This document shows positions 41,547-58,390 of a stretch of DNA of 64,000 bases, piece by piece; the stretch's first letter is position 1; each line of letters starts with the position of its first letter. The stretch covers positions 160,704-224,703 of IMG/VR virus record IMGVR_UViG_3300036770_007495. The stretch is one strand, 5' to 3'. The translations under genes and the position numbers were made by a program. The notes below the pieces were generated by a model, which did no database searches, was not told the DNA's origin, and saw only the letters and a program-made list of their open reading frames with translations.

Positions 41547-41930
41547 TTATAGTTGATTAACTATTTCTGCTCTTCTGATTGCTGAAATAATGTTTTGAGA
41601 TACCAAAGCATCCAAGCCGGCTACTACTCTAGGATCATCTGATACAACTATACCACGCCAACAAGCAAGCAAAAGTCTCAATGCAGCAATGGTAGAGTCT
41701 TCTGATGTACTTATACCTGCCATTTCTTGCAAAGTAAATTCAGAAATAAACTCTTCTGTATTGTTCCAGACTTTTACCAATTGAGATGCATTCCATTGCT
41801 GTAATGCAGCATCATAAGTATCATCTAATTCTTGCTGAGAAGGTGCAGGTAATCCATCTGCAAATGTTATTATACCATCAGACTCATTAGCCTGTCTTCC
41901 CATGAATGCCAAGTGAAATAAATGTGTCAT
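41547..41930 (-). CDS. Putative tail fibre assembly/chaperone protein
   Basis: 127-aa ORF directly after a fibre gene; P.PSQQEL...DDPRV..GLDAL....IISA.R..EI pattern. Confidence 0.5.
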   Translation of the reverse strand: MTHLFHLAFMGRQANESDGIITFADGLPAPSQQELDDTYDAALQQWNASQLVKVWNNTEEFISEFTLQEMAGISTSEDSTIAALRLLLACWRGIVVSDDPRVVAGLDALVSQNIISAIRRAEIVNQL

Positions 41931-41931
41931 A

Positions 41932-43470
41932 TTATGCTTTTAGTTTATACCAAACCAAGAAAGAATTTGCAAGATAAGTAACAGTACCGGTAACACCACT
42001 TTCAACTTTTGTCTGAACTGTGAGATTTCCAGCATTGGCACCATTGTAAATAAAACCATTTACTCTTGCATTTCTTGCTGTGGCACCACCGCTGTTAGCA
42101 TTGGTTGTCACAGCACCATAAGCAGTAGCAAGGCTATTGCCTTCAGCTGCTGTAGAGTTAGCAATATAACCTTGTGCTAAAACTATTGTTGGGCTTGCAG
42201 GTCCAGTTATACCGAGCTCGCTGCCGGTTGTAGTTGCATTAGCAGTGTATTGAATATAACATTCAAAGTAGTATCTAGTATTAGGTTCCATGAAGAAAGA
42301 TAAGCCATCAACATTTTGAAGGGTTGTGTTGTTTGTAGTAGCAAAATTACCTGTCAATACAGCAACATTGGTTGCAAGAGATGACAATGATACTGTATTA
42401 CCACTTGTTATAGCTAAACTTGCTGTTGATTCTGTAAATACTAATGATTGAACTGTGGCCCATGAAGCAGAGTTTGAATTAACAGTGCTATATACTGATG
42501 CATTGTTAGCACTTTGTGATGCAAAACTTGTATATGTGCTGTTCCAGTTGTTAGAATTACCGCCAGTAGCTGCAACAATGCCCTGGCTAGATAAATTATT
42601 AACAAATGTATAATCTGCAAGTGATGCTGTTATGTTAGAACCAATTATATGAGCATTGTTGAGTGAATTTGTATTGTTAGATTGACCACCAAGAATAGAA
42701 GATCTGACACCGCTCGCGACATTGGATACTCCACCACCAACAAAAGAATATGTATTAGATGATGTGTTAGAATCACCCCCACCGACTGCACTAGCTACTC
42801 CACTAGCAATATTAGATTTGCCACCACCAATGCATGCATTAGTATTAGATGTAGAATTGAGATATCCACCTGCTATGACAGATTGAATACCTGCTGCAGC
42901 ATTGCCATTTCCGCCACCAACAGTTGAACTGGTGTTGGATGCGGTATTATTTATACCACCGCTAATTACACTATTCTCACCGCTTGCAACTTCTCCAGCC
43001 GCAGCTCTTAGTTTTTGCCAATCAGTTGCATAGATGCCTCGCTTATTGCCTCCTGATTCACTACCATCAGATATTTGTGCAAGTGTAGCACCAGTTCCTT
43101 TTGCTATTAATGCTGCATCAATATTATCTACTGTAGAAATTGCTGTGAGGGCATGAACAGTTCTAACATTGTTAGGAGATGCTGTTGATGATACTTGTTT
43201 AAAAATAGTCAAACCGTCACTTGAGACACTACCGCCCCATGTTGCTGAATTAGCATTAACAGTGGTATAAGCAGAAGACCATGTTGCTGAATTAGCATTG
43301 ACAGTTGTAGTAGTATTAACACCCTGAGTAAGATTCACAACCAAACCTGCATCAGTTTTGTATCTCAATGTTTTATCAGCTGCAGCATAAATTGCCATGT
43401 TGCCACTGCTTGGAGTAGCTGGCTCACTCGTCTCTGCAAATATTGCTGGAAATTTAAAATTGGGATCCAT
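41932..43470 (-). CDS. Tail fibre/adhesin with Gly-rich S(V/T)IxGGxxN repeats
   Basis: Repeats SVISGGINNTAS/STVGGGNGNAA/SVIAGGYLN...; NSATW repeats; paralogous to 45208-47115. Confidence 0.75.
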   Translation of the reverse strand: MDPNFKFPAIFAETSEPATPSSGNMAIYAAADKTLRYKTDAGLVVNLTQGVNTTTTVNANSATWSSAYTTVNANSATWGGSVSSDGLTIFKQVSSTASPNNVRTVHALTAISTVDNIDAALIAKGTGATLAQISDGSESGGNKRGIYATDWQKLRAAAGEVASGENSVISGGINNTASNTSSTVGGGNGNAAAGIQSVIAGGYLNSTSNTNACIGGGKSNIASGVASAVGGGDSNTSSNTYSFVGGGVSNVASGVRSSILGGQSNNTNSLNNAHIIGSNITASLADYTFVNNLSSQGIVAATGGNSNNWNSTYTSFASQSANNASVYSTVNSNSASWATVQSLVFTESTASLAITSGNTVSLSSLATNVAVLTGNFATTNNTTLQNVDGLSFFMEPNTRYYFECYIQYTANATTTGSELGITGPASPTIVLAQGYIANSTAAEGNSLATAYGAVTTNANSGGATARNARVNGFIYNGANAGNLTVQTKVESGVTGTVTYLANSFLVWYKLKA

Positions 43471-43475
43471 ATGTA

Positions 43476-44057
43476 TTAATAGCCAAAAGCTTCAAAGTCC
43501 TGTTTATAGAAACTGCGAACTTTTTCTTCTAGATATTTATCATAGTAATCTGAAACTTCACCTCTAAAACTTTTTCTTTCATGCGTGAAAAAAGGAATGC
43601 GAAATTTTTGTTTGAGCATCTCAAAGCATTCATTGAGTTGTTCATACTTAAAAACATGCATATGCTTGTTGATAAAATTGATTTGGGGTTCTAGATGCCT
43701 GTCAAACAAAAACATTCTTTCCTCTTGCGGCAAATCAAGACATTCGATAAAATCAGAGAAACTCAGCCCCCTGAATTCCGCCCCTCGACCTTCTATCAAA
43801 TTTATGTGGTGATACTCAGATATAAATCTGTCAAGAGGATTTCTCACTACAGCAAACCAATAATAATCTTTTGCTTGCGGATGCTTTTGCAATATCTCAT
43901 TGGGATACAAATGCTGCGGACACACTCTCAACTCTTCATCATAACGATGATTGTACAGGCTTTCTGAATTCATCATGCCTAGAGCTCGCTCAATGGTGGT
44001 GCCAGCTGTCTTGGGCACATGAACAAAAACAACTCTTTTACTGTGGGAAATAGGCAT
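43476..44057 (-). CDS. Sulfotransferase family 2-like protein
   Basis: VFVHVPKTAGTTIE (5'-PSB loop), FAVVRNPLDRFISEY (3'-PB), HLEPQ, YKQDFEAFGY. Confidence 0.88.
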   Translation of the reverse strand: MPISHSKRVVFVHVPKTAGTTIERALGMMNSESLYNHRYDEELRVCPQHLYPNEILQKHPQAKDYYWFAVVRNPLDRFISEYHHINLIEGRGAEFRGLSFSDFIECLDLPQEERMFLFDRHLEPQINFINKHMHVFKYEQLNECFEMLKQKFRIPFFTHERKSFRGEVSDYYDKYLEEKVRSFYKQDFEAFGY

Positions 44058-45201
44058 CCTTGTATTCCTTGATGAAGTTAACTTTTGCAACAGGATTTAG
44101 AGCTGGTGCAATGAAATGAATCAATGTGCGATCTCCAATTTCTTTTTCATACAAGAGAGGTTCTGCTGTGGATATGAGTTTAACTTTGTTATCAAGTTTG
44201 CTATTTTCTGTTAAGTTGTAAGAACAGAAATAATGATTCATAAATGACTGCTCAAAAAAGTATATGCCTGGCCACACACTCATGAGCCAGTTTACATTCT
44301 CAAAATGCTTTCTCATCTTGTCTGAGTTTACAAAAAGAAACTGGCCTGCATTAAAGGCCAATTGATTGCTATCATGCATTGCTTCAACTTGCTCTCTTGT
44401 CAAACACTTCAAACCATGATATTCACTATGATGTGAGGCAAAAGTTACCTTTGCTCTATTAATTGCAACATACAGCACTTCATGCTCATGGTCTTCATCA
44501 AAAATAGAATGAATATCTTTTGCAGCTAAAATATCAGCATCTAAAAATAGAATTTTGTTATAATCGTCAATCTCTGTAAAATCAAAAATTTTGGTTTTGT
44601 TTTTAGATATTTCTACGCCATCATCTGTATCTTCTATGATGTGATATTTGAATACAGCACCTGTTGGCTTGATTGCTTCAATGTCATCAGCCCATGACTG
44701 TGGCGCAATGAATAACACATCAAAATCTATTTGTGATGCTGTTTGAAAAATGCTCTCTATGCTAAGCTTTACCAACTTAAGGTAGTCTTTGTTGCCGCCA
44801 ACGCTGTAATATATCAGATTTTTTACACCTTTTGTGCCAATGACTTCATTGGTTGCACTCATGTAGCGCTCATTCAAAGCTTTCAAAATTTTTGCTTTGT
44901 TTTGATCTGTATTTTTGTAACTAGAATCCAGATTTATTTTGAATGGTCTTAGCAATTTCAATTGACTAGCTTCTTCAAACACCCAATTGTGTTTGAGTGC
45001 TTTGGTAAAAATTTGCTCGCTTGCATTTTTGAATTTTACTTTGAGAGAAATAGACTTGGCATTCCTAAACATTTTCTCAGAAATCAGAAAATGATGCAAC
45101 CGCAGCTGTGTGCTAAGCAATGGAAGTCTTAATCCATCAACTAATAATTCAGCAGATGCTACATCTTGTATATTAAGTGAGGGTGGTCTGAGTTTAATCA
45201 T
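44038..45201 (-). CDS. GT-A glycosyltransferase, GT8-like, with an extra N-terminal domain
   Basis: YLKLVKLSIESI, ILFLDADIL (DxD), FNAGQFLF, EQSFMNHYF, LIHF. Confidence 0.8.
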   Translation of the reverse strand: MIKLRPPSLNIQDVASAELLVDGLRLPLLSTQLRLHHFLISEKMFRNAKSISLKVKFKNASEQIFTKALKHNWVFEEASQLKLLRPFKINLDSSYKNTDQNKAKILKALNERYMSATNEVIGTKGVKNLIYYSVGGNKDYLKLVKLSIESIFQTASQIDFDVLFIAPQSWADDIEAIKPTGAVFKYHIIEDTDDGVEISKNKTKIFDFTEIDDYNKILFLDADILAAKDIHSIFDEDHEHEVLYVAINRAKVTFASHHSEYHGLKCLTREQVEAMHDSNQLAFNAGQFLFVNSDKMRKHFENVNWLMSVWPGIYFFEQSFMNHYFCSYNLTENSKLDNKVKLISTAEPLLYEKEIGDRTLIHFIAPALNPVAKVNFIKEYKDAYFPQ

Positions 45202-45207
45202 AATTTA

Positions 45208-47115
45208 TTATGGATAAGCAGGTGGCTCAAACACCCAAATTCCTGATACATGTGCAATCCATCGCACTCTTTCTGCAGCATTTGATGCACCTGTAACAGT
45301 AAAGACTTGTTCTGGGACTGCAGAGGTTTCTATGCCAAATCCAATTGCGCCAGCAGTTGTTACATCTGTTCCAATGGATTCAATGTGTAAAAGTTCTTCA
45401 TTGTAAGAATTGCTAGCTACTTTGCGTATCACAACTTTTCTCATGGCTTGTGAGAAGTTTTGACTATCATCAAATCCAAGAACTTGAATGGTAAACATGG
45501 CCATCATTGCCTGATTAGGCACTAAAAGTGATGTGATGTTGCTATTGCCAGGTGGATTATTTGCATTGTCTACTGAGAGAACAACAGTACCACCATTTAT
45601 AACTGTACCATACAAAACGTATTGAACGTGTTGTGCATCACCAGCAGATCCAAAATAACTGCTTGCATATGCATATTGACCGTGTGTGGGTGCTACTGCA
45701 CCATATCCACCTGGTATTGTAGAATAACTGCCAACTGCATTGTTGGTACTACCACCTGCAACTGTTGAATAAGTTCCGTTTGCAAAGTTGCCTGCACCGC
45801 CTGCAATAGTTGAATATGCACTGTTTGCACTATTATTAATCCCGCCACCAACTGTTGCATAAGATGAGAATGCATTGTTGCTTTGACCACCTGCAATGGT
45901 TGAAGTCTGACCGCCTGCTGTATTGTCAAGACCACCACCAATTGTTGCCCAAAAAGCAGATGTATCGTTGCTTTGACCACCTGCAATGGTTGAAGCTTGT
46001 CCAGCTGCATTGTTTTCATTGCCACCTCCTACAACTGCCTGAACAGCTGATGCTGTATTAGAGAGTCCGCCACCTATTACAGAATAATTGCCGCTTGCAA
46101 CTTGCGATGTTAATGCTCTGGTTTTCTGCCAATCAGTTGCATATTGACCTCTTTTATCGCCATTCGCTGAGGTGTTGTCAGGAATTTGAGCAAGAGTAGC
46201 ACCTGTGCCTTTAGCCACCAATGCTACATCAACGTTTGCAACTGCTGAAACAACAGTAAGCGCATGAACAGTTGTTACATTGTTGGGAGATGCTGTTGAT
46301 GAAACTTCTTTAAAAATAGTCAACCCACCACCTGAACTAGTGCCTGTGCCCCATGTTGCAGAATTGGCATTGACAGTTGAATACACAGAAGCATTATTAG
46401 CACTCTGTGCATTGATGGTTGTATATGCTGAAGACCAACGCGCAGAGTTGGCATTGACTGTAGTATAAGAACTGCCCCAGAGTGTGCTGTTGCTGTTGCC
46501 GCTGTAAATGATGCTGTTGCCACTCATGGCACCATTCACAGAAAACTTGGCATTGGGTGTTGTTGTGTTGATGCCTACATTCTCTGCAGAAGAGAAATAC
46601 ATGAGCGTCACGCCTGCACCGGCACCAGAAAGAATGCCAGGATTACCTAGCATGTATTTGAAACCATTGTATACATCAGGGCCAATGGCACCATATTGAT
46701 AGGTTGCATTGCCATTGTTAAATGCAATGCCTGCCAAGTTGCCTTGCATGCCAAGACTACCAAGAGAAATCAGGCCACTTTGATAGCTGCCTGGAACTTG
46801 CATCACTTCTGCTGCAAGTGTTCCTGAACGATCTGTACCTTGAATTCGTATTTTTGCTGCACCAACTGTTGTGCTCTCAAATACTGCAACTTCGGCACCA
46901 CCATTGCCTGAAACATACAGCATTGATGAAGGGGTAAAAGTTCCAATGCCAACACGGCCACTGGTCAGTATGACCATTTTTGTGGTTCCATTGGTGTCAA
47001 GATTTAAACTGTTTCCTGCAGTTGCTCCAACACTACTGCTTACCAAAACGTTGGCAGCAGATAATGTCTGCGGAACAGAAGCATTATCATAAACCTTGAA
47101 AGGAACTAAACTCAT
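45208..47115 (-). CDS. Tail fibre/adhesin with Gly-rich repeats
   Basis: About 9 repeats of the form STIAGGxxNxA; shares a module with 41932-43470. TAAATA-N6-ATG. Confidence 0.75.
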   Translation of the reverse strand: MSLVPFKVYDNASVPQTLSAANVLVSSSVGATAGNSLNLDTNGTTKMVILTSGRVGIGTFTPSSMLYVSGNGGAEVAVFESTTVGAAKIRIQGTDRSGTLAAEVMQVPGSYQSGLISLGSLGMQGNLAGIAFNNGNATYQYGAIGPDVYNGFKYMLGNPGILSGAGAGVTLMYFSSAENVGINTTTPNAKFSVNGAMSGNSIIYSGNSNSTLWGSSYTTVNANSARWSSAYTTINAQSANNASVYSTVNANSATWGTGTSSGGGLTIFKEVSSTASPNNVTTVHALTVVSAVANVDVALVAKGTGATLAQIPDNTSANGDKRGQYATDWQKTRALTSQVASGNYSVIGGGLSNTASAVQAVVGGGNENNAAGQASTIAGGQSNDTSAFWATIGGGLDNTAGGQTSTIAGGQSNNAFSSYATVGGGINNSANSAYSTIAGGAGNFANGTYSTVAGGSTNNAVGSYSTIPGGYGAVAPTHGQYAYASSYFGSAGDAQHVQYVLYGTVINGGTVVLSVDNANNPPGNSNITSLLVPNQAMMAMFTIQVLGFDDSQNFSQAMRKVVIRKVASNSYNEELLHIESIGTDVTTAGAIGFGIETSAVPEQVFTVTGASNAAERVRWIAHVSGIWVFEPPAYP

Positions 47116-47152
47116 TTGAGTTATTTATGAACTATACAATGTAGTTCAAATA

Positions 47153-49003
47153 TTATGCATTGTAAAATGCAGTGCCTTCAATGAGTGCTGTTGTATTATC
47201 AGCAAAGGATGTGATAGTGAGAATGTAATCGCTGCCAGATACACTTACATCAACATCAACCAACTGTGTTTGTGCTTGATTATCAACAATTGCGTACACT
47301 GTTCCCTTGGTGTTGTTGCCAGCAGTTTCAATGGTTGCAATGACTTCAAATGCTGTTCTGTTGTTGCCATTGATGAGAACAACTGTGTATTTGACAGCAG
47401 CAAGATTTGCAACAGCAAAGGTGGTAACAGCTGTTCCTGTAGATGCAACAGTTGATACAAACAACTTCTTGTTGAGGTCTTTTGTACCATTTTCTACAAC
47501 AACGCCTGTTGTAGAAACAGCATTGTTGGTGGAGAGTGTTCCAGTGACAGATGTATTGGATCCAAGAGTGATGAGTGTTCCTGAATCAGTGATGTTGCTG
47601 TTGGCAAGAGTGTTGGCATCAGTTGCCTTTGGTACTGCATTGGCAGTAAGATTTACGCTGCCATTGTCAACAAGAGTAGAGCCCCAAACGCGGCTATCAA
47701 TGGTGCGTTTCTTGAGTGTTCCACTTTCTTCTGTGACAACGCTGTCGCCAGAACCTGTTGCAATGGTGCCAACTGTTGCAGTGCCACCAACTGTGATGCT
47801 GCCACTTGCAGAGATGTTGCCAACAACTGAGAGCTTTTCACCTGGTGCATCAGTACCAATGCCAACAGCACCAGTATCAGCAAATACAATGGATCCACCT
47901 TCTTTGTCAACAAATGTTGCAATGGGCTCAACGCCAGTTTGTCTTACATACAATGCTGGGCCAGTGCCTGAATTGATGACTGACAATGCACTTGTTGTTG
48001 TAACAGTTGTGTCAATGTATACAATGTCACCAAGCACAGACAAGTTGCCTGTGACGGTTGTATTGCCTGCAACTGTCAAACCAGCAAACTGTGGTGAGTC
48101 GCTGGTCTGCAAACCAGTGTCTACATCAAATGTAACCAGATTCTGTGTGAGAAGTCTGACTGTACCCTGTGAAGGAGAAGATGCAGAATTGAATAGTGCT
48201 GCTGATTGAGTATTGTAAGAAGAGTAAACACTTGCATTGGCTGCACTCTGTGCATTGATGGTAGTGTATGCAGAATCCCACTTGGGTGAATTTGCAAGCT
48301 TGTTGTCAATCTCAGTTTCTGTGTAGTACCTGCCATCCAAGTCAATGGTGCCTACGCTTGTTGCAGTGACGTGACCAAATGCATCAATTGTTGTGCCAAG
48401 GCTTTGAATTACAATGCCATTGGAATTGGTGCTTGCAATGGAAGCGCCGCCAAATGTATTGTGACCAATTTCAACTGCAGCACCTTCTCCGGTGCCACTT
48501 GAGGACAGACCTCTGTTGACAGTAACTGTTGCAACATAATCACCTGTTGTATCAGTTCCAAGTTCAACAGAGTTTGGTTGAATTGCAAGTGTTGTGGTTC
48601 CAACATTGGTTGAACCATCAAATGTTACGGAACCTGCAACATCTCCTGAAAGTGTAATTGTGATGGGTGCTGCCCATTTTGTTGCTGTACTTGCATTGCC
48701 TGCAAGTGAGCCAATGAAGCTTGATGCATTGACTGTGCCAAAAGTTGGAGTGAAGCTGACACCAACAGTGACTGGTGTACCAGAATCATAGGATGCATTT
48801 GTGGCTGTTAAGTTGGTGCTGAATGTAAGAGGTGCACCACCAGACAAAGCACCAGCAAAAATTGAGTACAAATCCTGACCAGCAGAGAGAATTTTACCTG
48901 CTGTATCAATGGAAACATCGCTAGCACCTTTTGCAAAGTAAGCACCATACTGGCCGTAGATGCGGTTTTTTACTCTGAAATCATCAATCAAGTTAGTAGC
49001 CAT
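47153..49003 (-). CDS. Tail fibre/virion structural protein
   Basis: S/T/G-rich, GNASTATKW...ITLSGDVAGSVTFDGS fibre motif and SDSPQFAGLT. TAAATA-N7-ATG. Confidence 0.7.
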   Translation of the reverse strand: MATNLIDDFRVKNRIYGQYGAYFAKGASDVSIDTAGKILSAGQDLYSIFAGALSGGAPLTFSTNLTATNASYDSGTPVTVGVSFTPTFGTVNASSFIGSLAGNASTATKWAAPITITLSGDVAGSVTFDGSTNVGTTTLAIQPNSVELGTDTTGDYVATVTVNRGLSSSGTGEGAAVEIGHNTFGGASIASTNSNGIVIQSLGTTIDAFGHVTATSVGTIDLDGRYYTETEIDNKLANSPKWDSAYTTINAQSAANASVYSSYNTQSAALFNSASSPSQGTVRLLTQNLVTFDVDTGLQTSDSPQFAGLTVAGNTTVTGNLSVLGDIVYIDTTVTTTSALSVINSGTGPALYVRQTGVEPIATFVDKEGGSIVFADTGAVGIGTDAPGEKLSVVGNISASGSITVGGTATVGTIATGSGDSVVTEESGTLKKRTIDSRVWGSTLVDNGSVNLTANAVPKATDANTLANSNITDSGTLITLGSNTSVTGTLSTNNAVSTTGVVVENGTKDLNKKLFVSTVASTGTAVTTFAVANLAAVKYTVVLINGNNRTAFEVIATIETAGNNTKGTVYAIVDNQAQTQLVDVDVSVSGSDYILTITSFADNTTALIEGTAFYNA

Positions 49004-49034: not shown

Positions 49035-51974
49035 TCAACCAGCTGCAAACAAATTTGTGCGCAGGCATTTGAATACCTTGTCTGTAGCATTGCCCTGTAG
49101 AGAATGTGCTGTGAGTGAAACTGCCAATCCATTGGTAATGGTGCCATATTCTACCAACGGACCAGTGCTAGTAAACAAAATACCATATTCAGAAGATGCT
49201 GCTTCTGCACCATCACCAATTGTATTGATCTCACTGTAGTGCACTTTGTTGAGCACTGTGTCTCTCACTTCAATGATGTACTTGCATGAGTTGAAATCAG
49301 TTAGACTGTATGAATCAATGATGCCAAAATCAGCAATGGATGTCTTCTCAAAATTTGAAATGGGCTTTGGATTGATTTCAAGATAGTGAGACGCATTGCT
49401 GCCATCACCAGTTGCAAGCATGTAAATTCTGCCATTGGCTGTAAGATTGATGGTGCCGCTCTTTTTAACAATGCCATTGTACCATTCAGTGTTGATGAAA
49501 TTGGTCAGTGAAGTCTGTGCACTATCACGATTGATGTACAAAGTATCAACCAATTGATTGGTATTGCCGCCAGAGAAATAAATTGCACTGCTGGAACTCA
49601 CTGTGCCTGCAACAGTCAAATTGCCGCTGATGGCAACACTGCCAGTCACATCAAATCCAGACAATTCATACTGCTTGATGTCAATGTATGTGATGTTGGC
49701 AGATGTTGCTTCAAGCAAAGATGTTGTAAGCGTGCCCTGCACCGTAACATTGCCTGTTACAGTGCCGCCAGACAGAGGCAGATAATTGCCAGATGCATTG
49801 TTGTTAGCATTGATCCAAATGGCTGATGCAGAATTATAAACAAGTGTCTGTCCATCTTGTACATCGGTGATGCGAACATTGTGCAGCTCATCCAATTCAT
49901 AGCCATTGTCTATTTCAACATAAATTTTTCCATTGACTGTTGAATTGAGAGAAAATCCGACCTTGACAAGGTGATTTGGTGCCTGTGGTTTGATGTTTGT
50001 TATTGCACCCGCAGCAGTTGAGGAGAGATAAAGTGTGGTGCCTTCAGGATATGCTCTTGTATCAATGCCTTCAAGCTCACCCATGGTCATGATGTAGCCT
50101 TCTTGGTTGATTGCAGTTGATCCCATGGTTATACCAATGGTATCTGCTGATCTAAGATCAGAAGTAGCAAGTGCAGGCCACATTTTGCCTCTGTTGCCTT
50201 GCACACCTGATAGATAAACTACTGTGCCTTTGGGAATTTCACTGCCTGTTTTGTTGACACCAATGATCCACAACATTTTATTGATGGGATACTTGAGTAC
50301 AGGATCTCCATCCATGAATACCAAAGTACGCTCAGCACTATCATAGTATAAGCGCCCATCAACATGAACAGGTGCAACATCTCTGAGGGTGAATGTCAGC
50401 ATCTCAGCATTGAAAGCACTCATGGTGCTTACATTGACAGTGTTGCCAAATGGTGTTATACCCAAATCGCCAGATGATGTATTAAATGTAAGAGTTTGAT
50501 ACCCTCCTCCACCGCTAGAAAAAATGTCTGCTAGATCCACACCACCAGACAGAATCTGACCTGTTGCAACATTGAGCGTGCCGTTCATTGTGCCACCATC
50601 TGCATACTGAACAGCAACAGTGCCGCCTCCTGCATATGACTGAGCATAAATGGCAAACTTCTTATACAAGTCAGTCTGCAAATTGGCAACATGAGACTTG
50701 ACCTCATTTGACATTTCTGTCTTGATGGCTCCCAATGCATCTTTGAAAACATTGGCTTGAGATGCTCGAGCTTCAGAAATGATGCCTTCATCAGGAGCAT
50801 TGTCTTTGAGAGCATGAACTTGCTCTGCAAACACTTCTTCCACACATTCGCGAACTGATTTGATTTGCTTGGTTGCTATTTTGTCAGCAGCTTCTTCAAG
50901 CGTCTGTTGAGCATGATCTTTGAGCTGTTGTTTTAAGTCATCAACAGATTCTTTGATTTGATCAATTTGCTGTTTTGAAACATCTTGCAGCCATGTGGTT
51001 TGCTTGGCAAAAAATGCAGCAATGCCATCATCAAAATTTTTGACGTTTTCAGTTACAACATTCTCATTGAATTCTTTGAGCTGCTGTTCAACATGCAACT
51101 TGAGATTTTCATCTGCATCCTTGATGACTGCTTGCAGAGACTCTGACAGTTGCGTAATTTTGCTGGTGAGCTCACCCTGCAGTGCATTCTTTGCTTCAAC
51201 ATTTGCAGCAAATATTTTTTCAGACAAATGTGTGAAAGTGCTGTGCTCTTGTTCCTGCACAACAGTCTCAAATTGGTCTTCCAGACGCTTGCATGCTTTT
51301 CTGAGCACATCAATGGTATGCTTGTTGATTTTGATTTCTGCAGTCTGTTTCCACTGCTCAAACAAATCAGCAAACTTCTCTGCACCATCATTGATCTTCT
51401 GATTGATGATGTTTTCCGCTTTGTTTTGAATGCCAAGTGCAGAAGCTGCAATGCTTTGACGAGCATCATCAATGGATTCATCAATGCGTTCCAGCAATTG
51501 CTGCTCAACTTGCTGCAAAAACTCAACAATTTTGTTTTCTTTGTTGGCTTTGGATTCTTCCTGCAATGCAGTCCAATTGTGCTGATTTTCTAAATCAACA
51601 TCTTCAACAATTTCTTCTTGTTCAATGAGATCATCAACTTCTGCTGCCTGTTCGTGAAGCAGTGCTTCAGATTCAAATTCTATGGCAATGCCATGCAGCA
51701 GTGCGTGTTCATTGATGAACACTTGAGATGGTGCATTGGATTCTACAACAACCTTGAACTCAATGTCTTTGTAAATTTTGCTGCCATATTCTACATCAAC
51801 TTTGATGATGGGGCAACCATCTACGTATCTCTCTGCTGATTTGATGAAAGCTGCATTTTCATTGAGCGTAATGTTGAATACGTTGAAAAATGCTTCATCA
51901 ACCTGGCTGCATCGAATAATGTTCTCACCTGTTTTAGTGAGATTGAAATTGAATTGTTGGTTGTCCAGGCGCAT
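49035..51974 (-). CDS. Chimeric virion protein: long acidic coiled coil plus fibre-type C-terminal domains
   Basis: E/Q/K-rich heptads over about aa 110-480, then GGGTVAVQY, GYELDELHNVRIT, YLPLSGGTVTGNV and IIDSYSLTDFNSCKYIIEV motifs. Confidence 0.65.
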   Translation of the reverse strand: MRLDNQQFNFNLTKTGENIIRCSQVDEAFFNVFNITLNENAAFIKSAERYVDGCPIIKVDVEYGSKIYKDIEFKVVVESNAPSQVFINEHALLHGIAIEFESEALLHEQAAEVDDLIEQEEIVEDVDLENQHNWTALQEESKANKENKIVEFLQQVEQQLLERIDESIDDARQSIAASALGIQNKAENIINQKINDGAEKFADLFEQWKQTAEIKINKHTIDVLRKACKRLEDQFETVVQEQEHSTFTHLSEKIFAANVEAKNALQGELTSKITQLSESLQAVIKDADENLKLHVEQQLKEFNENVVTENVKNFDDGIAAFFAKQTTWLQDVSKQQIDQIKESVDDLKQQLKDHAQQTLEEAADKIATKQIKSVRECVEEVFAEQVHALKDNAPDEGIISEARASQANVFKDALGAIKTEMSNEVKSHVANLQTDLYKKFAIYAQSYAGGGTVAVQYADGGTMNGTLNVATGQILSGGVDLADIFSSGGGGYQTLTFNTSSGDLGITPFGNTVNVSTMSAFNAEMLTFTLRDVAPVHVDGRLYYDSAERTLVFMDGDPVLKYPINKMLWIIGVNKTGSEIPKGTVVYLSGVQGNRGKMWPALATSDLRSADTIGITMGSTAINQEGYIMTMGELEGIDTRAYPEGTTLYLSSTAAGAITNIKPQAPNHLVKVGFSLNSTVNGKIYVEIDNGYELDELHNVRITDVQDGQTLVYNSASAIWINANNNASGNYLPLSGGTVTGNVTVQGTLTTSLLEATSANITYIDIKQYELSGFDVTGSVAISGNLTVAGTVSSSSAIYFSGGNTNQLVDTLYINRDSAQTSLTNFINTEWYNGIVKKSGTINLTANGRIYMLATGDGSNASHYLEINPKPISNFEKTSIADFGIIDSYSLTDFNSCKYIIEVRDTVLNKVHYSEINTIGDGAEAASSEYGILFTSTGPLVEYGTITNGLAVSLTAHSLQGNATDKVFKCLRTNLFAAG

Positions 51975-52008: not shown

Positions 52009-52257
52009 CTATGTACAGGGCAAGATTTCAAATGAATCATCTGGATACCACCAGATGTTGTAATTCTTTTTGAAATTTTCCAATTGCTCTGCGGTTGGCT
52101 TCTTTTTGGTGATGCGCATGATGCGATCACATTGAGCCTGAGCTGTTAAAAATTTGTATGGATGAGCAGCCATTTCACCCCACCATGCAATGTCTTCATA
52201 TGCAACTTTGTATGCATGTGTCTGTACATGCTGAGTAGCCAAGTCTTCTTTATTCAT
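52009..52257 (-). CDS. Hypothetical protein, last gene of the rml operon
   Basis: 82 aa; ATGA overlap with rmlA. Confidence 0.6.
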   Translation of the reverse strand: MNKEDLATQHVQTHAYKVAYEDIAWWGEMAAHPYKFLTAQAQCDRIMRITKKKPTAEQLENFKKNYNIWWYPDDSFEILPCT

Positions 52258-52970
52258 TTGAGTTCAAATTTGCGATTGCTGCGCTGTTCAATGGCTCTGA
52301 TCATGTTGGCACAATCAAGCAAGTCGTCATGATTGCCTGCATCAAACCAGAATCCATCCAGCTTCTGAACATACACACCATTGATTTCATTGATCTTTTT
52401 GATGAGATCAACAATTTCAAGTTCTCCTCGTGCAGAAGGCTTCAGATGTTTGGCCCAATGACATGCAGAATTGTCAAACACATACAAGCCTACAACAGCA
52501 TCATTGCTTACAAATGATGTTGGCTTTTCCACAATTTGCTCAATGTAACCATTTTTGGTTTTGACTACACCATATCGCTCTGGATGAGTGACTTCAAATG
52601 TGAAGATGCTGTTGGGAGTTGCATTGATTTTGGCATTGTTGATGATGATGTTGTCTCCCAGCACCAATGCAACATCATCTCCTGCAATCCATTTTTCTGC
52701 AATGGTGAATGCTTGTGGTAATCCTGCAGGCTCTGGCTGCACTTCAAACGTCAAATCGACATCATTGATGTGCCTCAATGCTTGCTTGAACAATGATTGT
52801 TGTTCAGGAGTTGTGATGACCATGATGTCTGTGATGCCCATGTCACGCAATGTCATGATGGGGTAGTAAATCATGGGATTTTTATACACTGGCAGCAACT
52901 GTTTGCTAACAGCATGTGTCAATGGATACAGTCGAGTGCCTTTGCCTCCTGCAAGAACAATGCCTTTCAT
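52254..52970 (-). CDS. rmlA: Glucose-1-phosphate thymidylyltransferase
   Basis: MKGIVLAGGKGTRLYPLT..VSKQLLPVY, EKP, KPSARGELEI, WFDAG. Confidence 0.95.
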   Translation of the reverse strand: MKGIVLAGGKGTRLYPLTHAVSKQLLPVYKNPMIYYPIMTLRDMGITDIMVITTPEQQSLFKQALRHINDVDLTFEVQPEPAGLPQAFTIAEKWIAGDDVALVLGDNIIINNAKINATPNSIFTFEVTHPERYGVVKTKNGYIEQIVEKPTSFVSNDAVVGLYVFDNSACHWAKHLKPSARGELEIVDLIKKINEINGVYVQKLDGFWFDAGNHDDLLDCANMIRAIEQRSNRKFELK

Positions 52971-53968
52971 TTCAGAATATAATGCTCCAGAGTCTTGGCA
53001 ATGCCACTGGAAAAGTCAAATTGTGGTTTCCAATTGAAGCGCGTTTGCATTTTGGTGCTGTCAATTGCATAACGACGATCATGACCAGGGCGATCATCAA
53101 CAAACTTGATGAAGTCAGCATATGATTGCGTTGCATTGCCACGTGGCGCCATTTCATCCAATTGTTTGCAAATGGTGTTGACCAAATCAATGTTGCGAAT
53201 CTCATTGCTTGCACCAATGCAGAAATGTTCACCTGGCTGTGTATCACCCATGAGCACTTGCATCACACCTGCAGCATGATCCTGCACATAAATCCAATCT
53301 CTCACCTGCATGCCATCACCATACACTGGAATGTCTTTGTATTCTAATGCATTTTTGATGACCTTGGGAATCAACTTCTCAACATGCTGTCCTGGTCCAT
53401 AGTTGTTGGAGCAATGAGTGATGGCTGCATTGAGCTTGTAAGTGTTGCAATATGCTTCTACCAACATGTCAGCACTTGCTTTGGTTGCTGAATAAGGATT
53501 GCGTGGATTGTAACAAGTTTGTTCATTGAATGCAGGAGCATTGGGTTCTAAGTGCCCAAATACTTCGTCAGTAGATACTTGTACAAATTTGTTTTGACTG
53601 TTGGCTCCCCAAATGCTCTTGCAACATTCTAGTAGGCACATGGTGCCATTGACATTGGTTCTCAAAAACTCTGAATTGCTTTTGATGGAGTTATCAACAT
53701 GTGTCTCAGCAGCAAAATTTACAATGGCATCAATGTTGTGCTTTTCAATGATGTATTGCATGATGCTTCTGTCAGAGATGTCTGCTTTCATGAACACACC
53801 ATATGAGCATCCCAACACTTTATGCTCATATGCAGCTGCAGGTGCATTGGTAGCAGCATATGTGAGCTTGTCTACATTGATGATGTTTTTGATTCTGGGA
53901 TTTTGCATGGCTAGTTGAATAAACTGCCAGCCAATGAAACCGTATCCGCCTGTTACAAGTAAGTTCAT
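52967..53968 (-). CDS. rmlB: dTDP-glucose 4,6-dehydratase
   Basis: LVTGGYGFIG, DKLTYA, FAAETHVDNSI, VSTDEVFG, YSATKAS, CSNNYGP, RDWIYV, DRPGHDRRYAID. Confidence 0.96.
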   Translation of the reverse strand: MNLLVTGGYGFIGWQFIQLAMQNPRIKNIINVDKLTYAATNAPAAAYEHKVLGCSYGVFMKADISDRSIMQYIIEKHNIDAIVNFAAETHVDNSIKSNSEFLRTNVNGTMCLLECCKSIWGANSQNKFVQVSTDEVFGHLEPNAPAFNEQTCYNPRNPYSATKASADMLVEAYCNTYKLNAAITHCSNNYGPGQHVEKLIPKVIKNALEYKDIPVYGDGMQVRDWIYVQDHAAGVMQVLMGDTQPGEHFCIGASNEIRNIDLVNTICKQLDEMAPRGNATQSYADFIKFVDDRPGHDRRYAIDSTKMQTRFNWKPQFDFSSGIAKTLEHYILK

Positions 53969-54855
53969 TTGTTGTTGATGTTGAAAGAAAGTTGATCAAT
54001 TGCCATCATCATTGCATCTTCAATGGGTGTCATGTGCAATTTGTGTGCAATGGCTTTGGATGCATCAAGTACACAATTGGATCTTGGTGCAGCAACTGTT
54101 TTGTTGAATTCATCAATGCTCTTGAAATACAATTTGTCTTTGATGAGATTTTTTTCTTTGAGCATTGCAACAACTTGCTGAGTATTGAGATGTCCTGGCT
54201 GTGTCAAATTGAAAGGAGACATTTTGAATTTATAAGAGTTACTTGCAATGTACACAACATTGCGAGCAAATTCAGGCAAATAGGTGAAAGAGTTGGTGGC
54301 ATTCAACAACACATCATAGTTGATGATTTTCATCAAATAGTTTCTTGGTGATGGTGCATCATCAAATGGAATTCTCAATCTGCAAACAAAAGCTTCATCT
54401 TGTAGCAACTGTTCTGCAAGTGATTTGGATCTGCTGTACCAAGAGCTTGTTGTTGATGCAAATCCAAAATTATGCTCATCTTTTTCTGTAAATTTGTGTG
54501 ACGGCAATTCACCTCTCTCACAATTTGCATCATTGTAGATGCATCCTGAAGAAACATGAACAAAAACAATGTTGTGCTTCTTGCATACATTATGAATTGC
54601 AACAGGCAAAAACACATTGCCTTCCAACACAGGCTGCTTGTTGATTTCGCGCTCACAAACATCAACATTTGGTGCACCTACATAACCACCACAGTTGATG
54701 ACTGCATCAATGTTCTTGTTGATGAGCAGGCGCGTAAACTGCTGCTCATCCAAGGGAAATCTCACTGAAGCAGTGGCAAAAGGAATATGCTGTCTGCACA
54801 GTTCTTTTGCAATTGCCTCACCAACGTATCCCGTCGCTCCAAGTAATAAGATCAT
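53965..54855 (-). CDS. NDP-4-keto-6-deoxyglucose 3,5-epimerase/4-reductase (NRS/ER-type; RmlD-like SDR)
   Basis: GATGYVG; G.PNVDVCE; SSGCIY; WYSRSK; RLRIPF...PRNYLMKIINY...NSFTYLPE; APRSNCVLD. These follow plant NRS/ER motifs (GRPNVDWCE, TGCIF, FYSKTK, PRNFITKIARY, NSMTILDE, APRSNNELD). Confidence 0.8.
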   Translation of the reverse strand: MILLLGATGYVGEAIAKELCRQHIPFATASVRFPLDEQQFTRLLINKNIDAVINCGGYVGAPNVDVCEREINKQPVLEGNVFLPVAIHNVCKKHNIVFVHVSSGCIYNDANCERGELPSHKFTEKDEHNFGFASTTSSWYSRSKSLAEQLLQDEAFVCRLRIPFDDAPSPRNYLMKIINYDVLLNATNSFTYLPEFARNVVYIASNSYKFKMSPFNLTQPGHLNTQQVVAMLKEKNLIKDKLYFKSIDEFNKTVAAPRSNCVLDASKAIAHKLHMTPIEDAMMMAIDQLSFNINNK

Positions 54856-57668: not shown

Positions 57669-57917
57669 CTACTTGTTTTGAATCTTGATGAGGTGTTCTA
57701 CGAGATCTGCAACTCCATCCTTTTCAAGAATCACCTGATCACCATATGGAGAACCTTCAAACAGAATTCTCCAGCACCAGCGCAATCTTTGCCGCAATGT
57801 TGCTTTGTGTGTATTTTGCATTTCCCAAATGGAAAACTCTGTTTGTTCAAGTTCATCATCATAAGCAACGCGAAGAATTTCGCTGCTGCATGCGCATTTG
57901 AAGTATTGTTCTTTCAT
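57669..57917 (-). CDS. Hypothetical protein
   Basis: 82 aa; ATGA overlap with the YopX gene. Confidence 0.65.
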   Translation of the reverse strand: MKEQYFKCACSSEILRVAYDDELEQTEFSIWEMQNTHKATLRQRLRWCWRILFEGSPYGDQVILEKDGVADLVEHLIKIQNK

Positions 57918-58390
57918 TTTAGCAGTTTGGGGTTTTCAAAGATGTTGCCGATGACCTCATATCTATGAGTTGCACTAGTCATATTTTCAATATCATCATA
58001 TCTCTTGTGATCATAAGACCAGCAAAAGCTTGGAAAAAGGAAAATAATTTCACCAACAAAGTCGCCATCTTCGATGAGCTCTGAAGTAAAAACACCTTTT
58101 GAGGTTTCGATGCTTTTAGAATGGCATCTGCTATACTTGACAATGTCGCCTTCGTAAATTTCTTTTCCGTTTTTGTCTTTCAGCCCGGTGTATTGCTGGA
58201 TAACGCAAGTTGGCGCAGGCGATGCAGTGTATTTATCGCCATGATCGCCATCAATTGCACCAACATAATCAGTCAGCCTGCCTGTAAATGGGCAAATGCT
58301 CCAATTGCTGTAACAGTGCAAGGAACTACTGTTCTCAAGCCAAGTTTTGTTTTGTTTGTCCCAAATGCGAAATTTTAGTTCTCTATTCAT
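57914..58390 (-). CDS. YopX-family protein
   Basis: MNRELKFRIWDK...IQQYTGLKDKNGKEIYEGDIV...EVIGNIFENPKLL. Confidence 0.9.
   Translation of the reverse strand: MNRELKFRIWDKQNKTWLENSSSLHCYSNWSICPFTGRLTDYVGAIDGDHGDKYTASPAPTCVIQQYTGLKDKNGKEIYEGDIVKYSRCHSKSIETSKGVFTSELIEDGDFVGEIIFLFPSFCWSYDHKRYDDIENMTSATHRYEVIGNIFENPKLLK

What the first reader, a model, noticed from the sequence alone, without database searches (positions are those of the whole stretch)
41547..47115. GT8-like glycosyltransferase and sulfotransferase inserted between two paralogous Ser/Thr/Asn-rich fibre genes: candidate sulfated-glycan decoration of virion fibres
Seen: one co-oriented unit of fibre (45208), GT, sulfotransferase, fibre (41932) and a chaperone-like ORF, with gaps of 6 nt or less or overlaps, downstream of a TAAATA promoter at 47122-47127. 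Known: mycobacteriophages glycosylate their own virion proteins with phage-encoded GTs, and T4-like cyanophages carry LPS-type GT clusters in variable regions. Inference: with the rhamnose operon 7 kb away, this could be a sugar-synthesis, transfer and sulfation pathway acting on fibres (receptor mimicry, shielding or receptor masking). I know of no description of sulfated virion glycans in a tailed phage.
Basis: partly seen in the sequence, partly recalled or inferred. Interest (0 to 1): 0.7.

Follow-up and report, generated by a model that had tools for sequence, protein, structure and literature searches.

The report
Phage fibre-linked glycosyltransferase–sulfotransferase gene pair
A large uncultured T4-like phage carries, wedged between two related tail-fibre genes, a sugar-adding enzyme and a sulfate-adding enzyme that recur as a virus-only pair next to fibre genes in dozens of other phages; this suggests, but does not prove, that these phages put sulfated sugars on their own fibres.

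Summary
On the minus strand, fibre A, a GT8 glycosyltransferase, a Sulfotransfer_2 enzyme, paralogous fibre B and a 127-aa ORF are packed with gaps of 1-6 nt or a 20-nt overlap. They follow a CATAAATA late-promoter-like motif.

Corrections:
- The "rhamnose operon" lacks RmlC.
- "Chaperone-like" has no support.
- The phage has no psbA, and its host is unknown.

New evidence:
- The GT8-sulfotransferase pair is a conserved, apparently virus-only module. Of 39 non-redundant viral loci of this GT8 subfamily, 30 carry the sulfotransferase, 28 of them directly adjacent.
- 18 of those 30 lie within three genes of a fibre-like ORF, against 1 of 30 for other viral GT8 genes and 5% genome background.
- Every fibre-A-type C-terminal domain found is followed at once by GT8 and sulfotransferase, on several unrelated phage backbones.
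- Some relatives add a short APS kinase. This genome has a homologue of it elsewhere.
- Catalytic motifs are invariant, and both enzymes look soluble.

The acceptor is not shown. I favour late cytoplasmic sulfo-glycosylation of the fibres (about 0.45) over remodelling of a host surface glycan (about 0.33). Structure comparison could not tell acceptor types apart. The complex prediction gave no answer, and no RNA run was listed.

The parts
47122..47129 (-). CATAAATA late-promoter-like motif. Its first base lies 14 nt before the fibre A ATG.
   Evidence: A genome-wide NATAAATA motif precedes structural genes at a fixed distance of 13-15 nt. Promoter function is inferred.
45208..47115 (-). Fibre A (635 aa). 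It has NSAxW repeats, GGxxNxAxGxxSxIxGG beta-helix-type repeats, and a conserved beta-sandwich C-terminal domain (residues ~470-635) ending in a flexible PPAYP tail.
   Evidence: Translation. 41% identity to the Cy-LDV1 putative tail fibre. C-terminal domain model with pLDDT 78, with weak matches to phage tailspike and fibre C-termini. Homologues of the C-terminal domain are always followed by GT8 and the sulfotransferase.
44038..45201 (-). GT8-family glycosyltransferase (387 aa): an N-terminal Ig-like beta-sandwich (1-125) plus a GT-A catalytic domain.
   Evidence: PF01501 above the cut-off. Model pLDDT 92. Matches glycogenin, UGGT, LARGE1, LgtC and RfaJ. D221xD223, the FNAGQF motif, H362 and K373 are invariant in 48 homologues. 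The N-terminal domain looks Ig-like, and the protein's own Atlas cluster is 100% viral. pI 6.5, no transmembrane segment.
43476..44057 (-). Sulfotransfer_2-family sulfotransferase (193 aa from the ATG at 44057). It overlaps the GT8 stop by 20 nt.
   Evidence: PF03567 E=1.4e-18 and phrog_3347. The 5'-PSB motif HVPKTAGT and the 3'-PB motif RNPLDRFIS are conserved; H13, K16, G19, H49, R72, P74 and S80 are invariant. pI 6.4, no transmembrane segment.
41932..43470 (-). Fibre B (512 aa), a paralogue of fibre A in its central repeat region, with a different C-terminal domain.
   Evidence: 59% identity over 229 aa, E=2e-61. Its N-terminus resembles that of the fibre downstream of the sulfotransferase in L014.
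41547..41930 (-). 127-aa acidic ORF of unknown function, 1 nt after fibre B. It is the last gene of the unit and converges on a plus-strand gene.
   Evidence: No Pfam or PHROG match. Atlas finds virus-only clusters, with only a weak XkdW association.
47153..49003 (-). 616-aa fibre-like protein with its own CATAAATA motif. It shares an NSA repeat with fibre A.
49035..51974 (-). 979-aa structural-like protein with its own CATAAATA motif.
52254..54855 (-). Genes for a dTDP-6-deoxyhexose pathway: RmlA (52254-52970), RmlB (52967-53968) and a 4-reductase-like gene (53965-54855). There is no RmlC.
   Evidence: A functional link to the GT8-sulfotransferase pair is not shown.
54951..57617 (-). 888-aa protein with a CATAAATA motif, heading the block that includes the rml genes.

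Best explanation
The GT8 and the sulfotransferase form a phage-specific two-step module. It is made late, in the cytoplasm, together with the fibre encoded just upstream.

Proposed mechanism:
1. The GT8 transfers a hexose from a UDP-sugar to an acceptor. It has a retaining GT-A fold with a DxD metal site, and its extra N-terminal Ig-like domain may hold the acceptor.
2. The sulfotransferase uses PAPS to sulfate that sugar. PAPS supply is helped by the phage's own short APS-kinase-like enzyme.
3. The most likely acceptor is the co-encoded fibre: fibre A, and possibly its paralogue fibre B. The virion would then carry negatively charged sulfated glycans on its receptor-binding apparatus.
4. A concrete candidate site is the invariant Tyr in the flexible C-terminal P-x-x-Y-P tail of the fibre-A-type domain.

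Shown: gene identities, conserved catalytic motifs, soluble character, tight packing behind a late-type motif, virus-only distribution of the pair, its enrichment next to fibre genes, and the strict fibre-A-domain/GT8/sulfotransferase cassette.

Inferred: donor sugars, order of reactions, late co-transcription, and above all the acceptor.
For: **Packing.** Gaps are 1-6 nt or overlaps. No NATAAATA motif lies directly before GT8 or the sulfotransferase. Neither intrinsic-terminator-like nor sigma-70-like sites exceed the number expected from shuffles. The only late-type motif is upstream of fibre A.

**The pair is conserved.**
- Of 39 non-redundant viral loci of this GT8 subfamily, 30 have the sulfotransferase within three genes, 28 of them directly adjacent.
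- Pairwise GT8 and sulfotransferase distances co-vary: Mantel r=0.62, reached by 0 of 2000 permutations.

**Fibre linkage.**
- 18 of those 30 pairs have a strict fibre-like ORF within three genes, and 12 have one directly upstream. Only 1 of 30 more distant viral GT8 loci does (Fisher p=2.6e-6). The background in this genome is 14 of 289 genes.
- Neighbours that have annotations are baseplate, receptor-binding or tail proteins.

**Cassette.**
- Every fibre-A-type C-terminal domain found is followed at once by GT8 and the sulfotransferase. This holds for the window, L005, L007, L014, L018, L019, L020-23, L024 and the P0125 contig, whether the search started from the GT8 or from the fibre.
- The backbones differ: T4-like versus a DnaE/ClpB-type phage. 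In L018 the three genes form an isolated island.
- The window's fibre C-terminal domain is closest to those of L018 and L024, while its enzymes are closest to those of L005. The parts were therefore re-assorted and yet stayed adjacent.

**Placement in relatives.** In the T4-like locus L013 the trio GT8, sulfotransferase and APS kinase sits between tail-fibre genes and gp13/gp14, inside the late structural block.

**Virus-only.**
- No GT8 relative turned up in 185,579 prokaryote species genomes, and the Atlas cluster is 100% viral.
- Bacterial relatives of the sulfotransferase never sit beside this GT8.

**Cellular location.** Both enzymes are slightly acidic and lack transmembrane segments. 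No tyrosine integrase was found.

**Sulfate donor.** The APS-kinase-like gene is 38-41% identical to the kinases physically linked to the pair in L012 and L013.

**Precedents.** Mycobacteriophage virion glycosylation (as cited in PMC12619734); giant-virus fibril glycosylation (PMC10117803, PMC8456856); predicted sulfation of tail-collar proteins (PMC2938197).
Against: - No direct evidence for any acceptor.
- The complex prediction of GT8 with a trimer of the fibre C-terminal domain gave no answer. This is not evidence either way.
- Structure comparison places the catalytic domain equally near protein-acting relatives (glycogenin, UGGT), glycan-acting ones and LPS-acting ones (RfaJ, LgtC), so it does not discriminate.
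- By general knowledge, most GT8 enzymes extend an existing glycan rather than start one on a protein. No initiating GT is adjacent.
- 12 of 30 pairs have no strict fibre-like neighbour, and the neighbouring fibres belong to several unrelated families, so there is no single shared acceptor domain.
- Bacterial relatives of the sulfotransferase sit in surface-polysaccharide clusters.
- Linkage between a receptor-binding protein and enzymes that modify its receptor would give the same synteny.
Confidence: 0.45

Rival explanations
1. Host-surface remodelling. The GT8 and sulfotransferase act on a lipid-linked or cytoplasmic precursor of a host surface glycan (LPS core or O-antigen, capsule or exopolysaccharide). 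They add a sulfated hexose that masks or alters the receptor recognised by the linked fibre. This would limit superinfection or the loss of progeny on cell debris.
For: - GT8 is the classic LPS-core transferase family. RfaJ, RfaI and LgtC are among the structural matches, and JGI names several homologues 'lipopolysaccharide biosynthesis glycosyltransferase'.
- Bacterial relatives of the sulfotransferase lie beside Wzt-type ABC exporters, GT4 enzymes, sugar epimerases and pyruvyl transferases.
- Distant cyanophage sulfotransferases sit with LPS-type genes.
- Receptor-modifying genes next to tailspike genes are known from temperate phages (general knowledge). Co-inheritance of a receptor-binding domain with enzymes that modify its receptor would explain the cassette equally well.
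Against: - There is no separate promoter-like motif. The genes sit inside a late-type unit with overlapping or abutting reading frames.
- The phage is T4-like, and no tyrosine integrase was found.
- The unit has no membrane components such as a flippase, polymerase or Gtr-type protein, and both enzymes are acidic and soluble.
- The GT8 subfamily was not found in any prokaryote genome.
- Modification made late would reach the outer surface only slowly (inference).
Confidence: 0.33
2. Another target, or none. The pair modifies a different virion protein (for example the 616-, 979- or 888-aa proteins, or the baseplate), a host protein or a soluble metabolite. Alternatively it sits in the fibre region only because that region tolerates accessory genes.
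For: - 12 of 30 pairs lack a strict fibre-like neighbour.
- The neighbours are heterogeneous.
- This genome has a second glycan cluster (GT4, a second sulfotransferase, DUF3431/methyltransferase, UDP-galactopyranose mutase) beside other fibre genes but on the opposite strand.
Against: - Enrichment next to fibre-like genes is specific to the GT8 subfamily that is paired with the sulfotransferase: 18 of 30 against 1 of 30.
- The strict cassette with the fibre-A-type domain survives re-assortment.
- Catalytic residues are invariant, so the genes are under selection.
Confidence: 0.18
3. DNA hypermodification. The GT glycosylates modified bases in phage DNA, as T4 glucosyltransferases do, and the sulfotransferase decorates the sugar.
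For: Virus-encoded GTs that hypermodify DNA are diverse (cited in PMC12619734). A ThyX gene lies near the pair in L005.
Against: - The genome has no thymidylate-synthase or dCMP-hydroxymethylase family gene.
- The location is among fibre genes in nearly all relatives.
- Sulfated DNA glycans are not known (general knowledge).
Confidence: 0.03

Closest known systems
Mycobacteriophage virion glycosylation by phage-encoded glycosyltransferases (Freeman et al. 2023, as described in PMC12619734)
   Same: A tailed phage encodes its own GTs. Glycans are attached to virion proteins, reportedly at their C-termini, and act as a surface shield.
   Different: The targets there are capsid and tail-tube proteins, not fibres. 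No sulfotransferase or PAPS-supply gene is involved. The host group is different. Here the modification itself is unproven.
Giant-virus (Megavirinae) fibril glycosylation with virus-encoded sugar pathways (PMC10117803, PMC8456856)
   Same: The virus encodes nucleotide-sugar synthesis genes and several GTs, including GT8-like ones, to decorate surface fibrils on its own. This phage likewise has rmlA/rmlB, UDP-galactopyranose mutase, GT8, GT4 and methyltransferase genes beside fibre genes.
   Different: Those are viruses of eukaryotes with capsid fibrils, and I know of no report of sulfation there. The similarity is in logic; no close homology is shown (BFVD matches are generic GT8).
GT8 enzymes that glycosylate serine-rich-repeat adhesins (GlyE, PDB 5gvv) and glycogenin
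   Same: A GT8 GT-A fold acting on a protein-linked glycan or on a protein Tyr. GlyE is the best, though weak, sequence match among solved structures (E=0.007), and glycogenin is among the best fold matches.
   Different: The matches are no better than those to LPS transferases. The phage enzyme has a distinct N-terminal Ig-like domain. GlyE acts after an initiating GT, and none is adjacent here.
Phage seroconversion or receptor-modification genes next to tailspike genes (P22 gtrABC, epsilon15; general knowledge)
   Same: Glycan-modifying genes are linked to the receptor-binding protein gene.
   Different: Those are temperate phages with membrane-embedded enzymes expressed in lysogens. Here the enzymes are soluble, sit in a late-type unit of a T4-like phage, and no tyrosine integrase was found.
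Sulfotransferase genes annotated in cyanophages (P-SSM7, S-ACG-2014f) and pelagiphage; phrog_3347
   Same: The same Pfam and PHROG family. Their function is admitted to be unknown ('remains unclear', PMC10580990, said there of a different sulfotransferase family).
   Different: Only 28-30% identity. In those phages the gene sits beside gp5 or LPS-type genes (GT25, heptose epimerase). It is not paired with this GT8 and not beside fibres.
Predicted hydroxylation-sulfation of tail-collar and collagen-like proteins in bacterial operons (Iyer et al. 2010, PMC2938197)
   Same: A sulfotransferase and PAPS synthesis genes are co-encoded with a phage-tail-fibre-type protein, which is proposed as the substrate.
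   Different: Those loci are bacterial. Sulfation there is proposed on hydroxylated amino acids made by dioxygenases, not on a sugar, and the sulfotransferase family is different.

Membership tests
Glycosyltransferase family 8 (Pfam PF01501) | Profile match above the curated threshold | tested here: met
   29.9 bits against a cut-off of 24.3, residues 135-365. 31.7 bits in the genome search.
Glycosyltransferase family 8 (Pfam PF01501) | GT-A fold with a DxD metal-binding motif, plus the downstream NAG and His/Lys motifs | tested here: met
   Model pLDDT 92. Foldseek matches to glycogenin, LgtC, RfaJ, UGGT and LARGE1 at E 1e-10 to 1e-7. D221, D223, N284, G286, H362 and K373 are invariant in 48 homologues. 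Their correspondence to the metal and UDP ligands is inferred from motif position.
Glycosyltransferase family 8 (Pfam PF01501) | Retaining transfer from a UDP-sugar | not testable with these tools
   Needs an enzyme assay.
Sulfotransfer_2 (Pfam PF03567), PAPS-dependent carbohydrate sulfotransferases | Profile match above the curated threshold | tested here: met
   68.3 bits against a cut-off of 22, covering nearly the full profile. phrog_3347 E=6e-20.
Sulfotransfer_2 (Pfam PF03567), PAPS-dependent carbohydrate sulfotransferases | 5'-phosphosulfate-binding loop (PKxGxT) and 3'-phosphate-binding motif (RxPxxRxxS) | tested here: met
   PKTAGTT and RNPLDRFIS are present. H13, K16, G19, R72, P74 and S80 are invariant in both sulfotransferase alignments (9 and 15 homologues); P15 is invariant in the first and nearly so in the second.
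Sulfotransfer_2 (Pfam PF03567), PAPS-dependent carbohydrate sulfotransferases | A source of PAPS | tested here: inconclusive
   A short APS-kinase-like gene lies at genome 68409-68837: PF01583 at 32 bits against a cut-off of 21. It is 38-41% identical to the kinases linked to the pair in L012 and L013, and its best solved match is an APS kinase, 2yvu. No ATP sulfurylase or PAPS-reductase family gene was found, so APS must come from the host.
Phage virion glycosylation systems | Glycan shown on a virion protein and dependent on the phage GT | not testable with these tools
   The phage is uncultured. Only synteny and expression-signal evidence is available.
Phage seroconversion / O-antigen modification modules | Temperate lifestyle, membrane-embedded transferase or flippase components, own promoter | tested here: not met
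   No tyrosine integrase. No hydrophobic segment typical of a transmembrane helix in GT8 or the sulfotransferase. No separate promoter-like motif. Serine integrases were not searched.
dTDP-L-rhamnose pathway (RmlABCD) | All four enzymes present | tested here: not met
   RmlB is above the equivalog cut-off (386 against 365 bits). RmlA is strong but below the cut-off. The reductase match is weak (38 against 224 bits). No RmlC-family gene exists in the genome.
T4-type late promoter (TATAAATA) | Consensus octamer upstream of late structural genes | tested here: inconclusive
   The variant NATAAATA (mostly CATAAATA) precedes sheath, tube and fibre genes. It sits only 5-7 nt from the ATG, unlike T4. 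Transcription was not measured, and gp55 was not searched.

The most novel reading that the evidence does not exclude
Many uncultured freshwater, soil and lagoon phages use a self-contained, virus-only module to put sulfated hexose on their own tail fibres or receptor-binding proteins. The module consists of GT8 with an Ig-like domain, a sulfotransferase and, in some phages, an APS kinase. The attachment site may be a conserved C-terminal Tyr-containing tail. This would be the first sulfated virion glycan described for a tailed phage and a new way of tuning adsorption or shielding.
Probability: 0.4. Interest if true: 0.8.

Novelty: new variant of a known kind. Interest (0 to 1): 0.62.

Why it matters
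Phage sulfotransferases are annotated, but their role is openly described as unclear (PMC10580990). I found no paper in the held library that describes sulfated phage virions or a fibre-linked GT-sulfotransferase module.

This work turns a single-genome curiosity into a recurrent, virus-specific cassette with a clear and cheap test: co-express the fibre with and without the enzymes and measure its mass.

If the fibres are the acceptor, it adds sulfation to the short list of phage virion modifications. That would bear on receptor recognition, on non-specific sticking to charged particles and polysaccharides in water and soil, and on engineering of phage surfaces.

If the host glycan is the acceptor, it would be an unusual case of a lytic T4-like phage rewriting its receptor with a sulfated sugar.

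Either way, the phage-borne APS kinase implies that the phage diverts host sulfur assimilation towards PAPS.

Tried and rejected
- **Nucleotide search.** Megablast of the region against GenBank phages found no match.
- **Protein searches against phages.** The GT8 gave no match. Fibre A gave a single partial match.
- **Single-protein scan of IMG/VR with the sulfotransferase.** Nothing. The scan with the GT8 alignment succeeded.
- **Complex prediction** of GT8 with three copies of the fibre A C-terminal domain. The score was 0.00 and the tool says 'no answer', so I do not use it as evidence.
- **Fold comparison of GT8** against PDB, Swiss-Prot models and BFVD. The fold is clearly GT8 but the acceptor type cannot be read from it.
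- **Fold comparison of the fibre C-terminal domain.** Only weak similarity to tailspike and fibre C-termini.
- **Sequencing runs.** No RNA run was listed. DNA contigs only confirm the arrangement.
- **DNA-modification idea.** Rejected as unlikely, because no thymidylate-synthase or hydroxymethylase family gene is present.
- **'Cyanophage' assumption.** Not supported, because there is no psbA.
- **'Chaperone' label for the 127-aa ORF.** Not supported.
- **Co-variation of the GT8 N-terminal domain with fibre type.** The domain also occurs in loci without the fibre-A-type domain, so there is no specific signal.
- **C-terminal P..Y motif.** Enrichment is nominally strong (8 of 27 against 7 of 312), but it rests on only two independent protein families, so I keep it as a lead only.

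Full report
**What is there**

The window is the last 64 kb of a 224,703-bp viral record with direct terminal repeats, judged complete. The record carries a T4-type clamp loader, baseplate wedge, sheath, tube and tape-measure-like genes. Its proteins are only 25-36% identical to those of any isolated phage. It has no psbA, so the host is unknown and 'cyanophage' is not established.

On the minus strand between 41547 and 47115 lie five ORFs:
- Fibre A, 635 aa.
- A GT8 glycosyltransferase, 387 aa (PF01501 above threshold).
- A Sulfotransfer_2 enzyme (PF03567, E=1.4e-18; phrog_3347).
- Fibre B, 512 aa.
- A 127-aa ORF.

The sulfotransferase most likely starts at the ATG at 44057, where MPISHSKRVVFVHVPKTAGTT begins, and so overlaps the GT8 stop by 20 nt. 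The other junctions are 6, 5 and 1 nt.

Fibres A and B share 59% identity over 229 aa and are rich in Gly, Ser, Thr, Asn and Ala (56% and 62%).

Contigs from a lagoon metagenome (99% identical over 4.7 kb) and a soil metagenome (95% over 2.6 kb) span the gene junctions. The arrangement is therefore real and recurs in nature.

**Expression signals**

Across the genome NATAAATA occurs 59 times. Of these, 37 lie just before an ORF start on the same strand, usually with the first base 13-15 nt before the ATG. The genes so preceded include the sheath, tube, tape-measure-like gene, tail-collar fibre, fibre A and the 616-, 979- and 888-aa proteins upstream.

No such motif lies directly before GT8 or the sulfotransferase. 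Sigma-70-like and terminator-like sites do not exceed the shuffled expectation. The simplest reading is one late transcript from fibre A through the 127-aa ORF. This is inferred, since no RNA run could be listed.

**The enzymes look active and soluble**

- With 48 homologues the GT8 folds at pLDDT 92. Residues 126-387 form a GT-A domain that matches glycogenin, UGGT, LARGE1, XXYLT1, LgtC, RfaJ and galactinol synthase at similar scores.
- The DxD motif (D221, D223), the FNAGQF motif, H362 and K373 are invariant.
- Residues 1-125 form an Ig-like beta-sandwich. The protein's own Atlas cluster is 100% viral.
- The sulfotransferase keeps the PAPS-binding motifs, invariant in 15 homologues.
- Both proteins have a pI near 6.5 and no membrane segment.

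**Comparative genomics, the main new evidence**

The GT8 has 129 metagenomic homologues. It has none in 185,579 prokaryote species genomes by pattern scan.

Contexts were fetched for 10 proteins and 80 IMG/VR loci and analysed with home-built profiles. After collapsing loci at 90% GT8 identity:
- 39 loci belong to the close subfamily. 30 of them have the sulfotransferase within three genes and 28 have it directly adjacent, usually overlapping the GT8 stop.
- The 30 more distant viral GT8 loci never have it.
- GT8 and sulfotransferase divergences co-vary (Mantel r=0.62; reached by 0 of 2000 permutations).
- Five of the 30 paired loci also carry a short APS kinase. In L012, L013, L039 and L046 it directly follows the sulfotransferase.
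- The window's genome has a homologue elsewhere, at genome position 68409-68837. It is 38-41% identical to those kinases.

Bacterial relatives of the sulfotransferase are common at 25-34% identity. None of the 80 bacterial loci examined carries this GT8, the short kinase or the fibre domain. Their neighbours include Wzt-type exporters, GT4 enzymes, sugar epimerases and pyruvyl transferases, which are surface-polysaccharide clusters.

**Link to fibres**

- I defined a fibre-like ORF strictly as at least 300 aa with at least 45% Gly+Ser+Thr+Asn+Ala. By this rule 18 of the 30 pairs have one within three genes, and 12 have one directly upstream on the same strand.
- The comparison figures are 1 of 30 for other viral GT8 loci (Fisher p=2.6e-6) and 14 of 289 genes in this genome.
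- Neighbours that match a family at all are baseplate-wedge, minor-tail, tail-fibre, BppL_N or Laminin_G_3 proteins.

A stricter pattern also holds. The C-terminal beta-sandwich domain of fibre A (residues ~470-635; model pLDDT 78) was found in the window, L005, L007, L014, L018, L019, L020-23, L024 and the P0125 contig. In every one of these it is followed within 1-6 nt, or by an overlap, by GT8 and then the sulfotransferase.
- These loci sit on different backbones: T4-like, and a phage with DnaE and a ClpB-like ATPase.
- In L018 the three genes form an isolated island between genes on the opposite strand.
- The window's fibre domain is closest to those of L018 and L024, but its enzymes are closest to those of L005. 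The parts have been exchanged and yet remain together.

In the T4-like locus L013 the trio GT8, sulfotransferase and APS kinase lies between tail-fibre genes and gp13/gp14, within the late structural block.

**Interpretation**

The data establish a virus-specific, two-enzyme sulfo-glycosylation module, three enzymes with the kinase, that travels with receptor-binding proteins. Two readings fit.

I favour modification of the fibres themselves (0.45). The enzymes are soluble and acidic, packed behind a late-type motif with the fibre, absent from bacteria as a pair, and made where and when fibres fold. Phage and giant-virus precedents for self-glycosylation exist (PMC12619734 citing Freeman et al. 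2023; PMC10117803; PMC8456856).

Remodelling of the host glycan that the linked fibre recognises is a serious rival (0.33). GT8 is the LPS-core transferase family, the sulfotransferase's bacterial relatives sit in polysaccharide clusters, and linkage of a receptor-binding protein to enzymes that modify its receptor would produce the same cassette.

DNA modification is unlikely, because the genome has no hydroxymethylase-family gene.

Neither the complex prediction (no answer) nor fold comparison can decide the acceptor.

One lead is worth testing. All fibre-A-type domains end in a flexible P-x-x-Y-P tail with an invariant Tyr, and glycogenin, a GT8, glucosylates a Tyr. An unrelated class of upstream fibres ends in PYN. 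Only two independent protein families support this.

- The rml cluster gives RmlA, RmlB and a weak 4-reductase but no RmlC. Unless the host supplies RmlC, the product would be a 6-deoxy-D-hexose rather than L-rhamnose.
- GT8 enzymes normally use UDP-sugars (general knowledge), so nothing ties the rml genes to this transferase. Look for hexose (+162) plus sulfate (+80), not deoxyhexose.
- The genome is nonetheless rich in glycan genes beside fibre genes. A second cluster lies just upstream of the window (genome 152116-156072) and abuts further fibre genes. It holds a GT4, a second sulfotransferase, a DUF3431/methyltransferase and a UDP-galactopyranose mutase.

**Novelty**

Phage sulfotransferases are annotated, but their role is stated to be unclear (PMC10580990). 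I found no description of this cassette or of sulfated phage virions in the held library. The nearest idea is a 2010 prediction that bacterial tail-collar and collagen-like proteins are hydroxylated and then sulfated (PMC2938197).

I rate this a new variant of a known kind, namely virus-encoded glycan modification, with interest 0.62. The recurrent, virus-only module is solid and easy to test, but its target is still inferred.

Noticed in passing
whole genome; in the window e.g. 47129-47122, 49018, 51997, 57630 (minus strand) and 20250, 22960, 24829, 27682, 29605 (plus strand): The NATAAATA late-promoter-like motif sits at a nearly fixed 13-15 nt from the ATG of structural genes, leaving 5-7 nt between motif and start codon. 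No Shine-Dalgarno-like sequence is visible. This suggests leaderless or near-leaderless late mRNAs, unlike T4.
   Followed up: partly
outside the window: genome 152116-156072 (locus L016 6117-10073), just upstream of window position 1: A second glycan cluster: a GT4-type transferase, a second Sulfotransfer_2 gene, a DUF3431 plus methyltransferase fusion, and a UDP-galactopyranose mutase. It converges on fibre genes, including an 858-aa Mtd_N/Collar/RCC1 protein that runs into window 1-737.
   Followed up: partly
outside the window: genome 68409-68837 (locus L017 5410-5838): A short (142-aa) APS-kinase-like gene. It is homologous to the kinases that directly follow the GT8-sulfotransferase pair in other phages. 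The genome has no ATP sulfurylase or PAPS reductase gene.
   Followed up: yes
window 52254-54855: The 'rhamnose operon' is RmlA, RmlB and a weak 4-reductase without RmlC. On its own it would yield a 6-deoxy-D-hexose rather than L-rhamnose. It lies behind the 888-aa late-motif gene.
   Followed up: yes
locus L005 2995-5991 (related phage, GT8 58% identical): A related phage carries PSCyt2/PSD1 and DUF1501 genes next to its clamp loader. To my knowledge these families are typical of Planctomycetota and Verrucomicrobiota, so this is a possible host clue for this phage group.
   Followed up: no
loci L026, L030, L033, L045 (genes directly upstream of GT8): A different class of upstream proteins ends in a shared C-terminal [SA]-C-[SPG]-T motif. 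This could be another conserved tail next to the enzyme pair.
   Followed up: no
window 42650-46351 (run X2): A few lagoon-metagenome contigs join fibre B sequence to fibre A sequence, skipping about 3.0-3.3 kb that includes GT8 and the sulfotransferase. Only 22-32 nt fit on the shorter side. These are probably assembly joins across the paralogous repeats, but natural recombinant fibres that lack the enzymes are possible.
   Followed up: no
window 57914-58895: A YopX-family protein (57914-58549) overlaps a Macro-domain/phosphatase-like ORF (58383-58895), just beyond the fibre block.
   Followed up: no
window 38978-41125: A 715-aa protein with an N-terminal PKD domain follows the gp6-like baseplate wedge gene. 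It converges on the fibre unit at 41544/41547 with only 2 nt between the stops and no terminator-like site at the junction.
   Followed up: no
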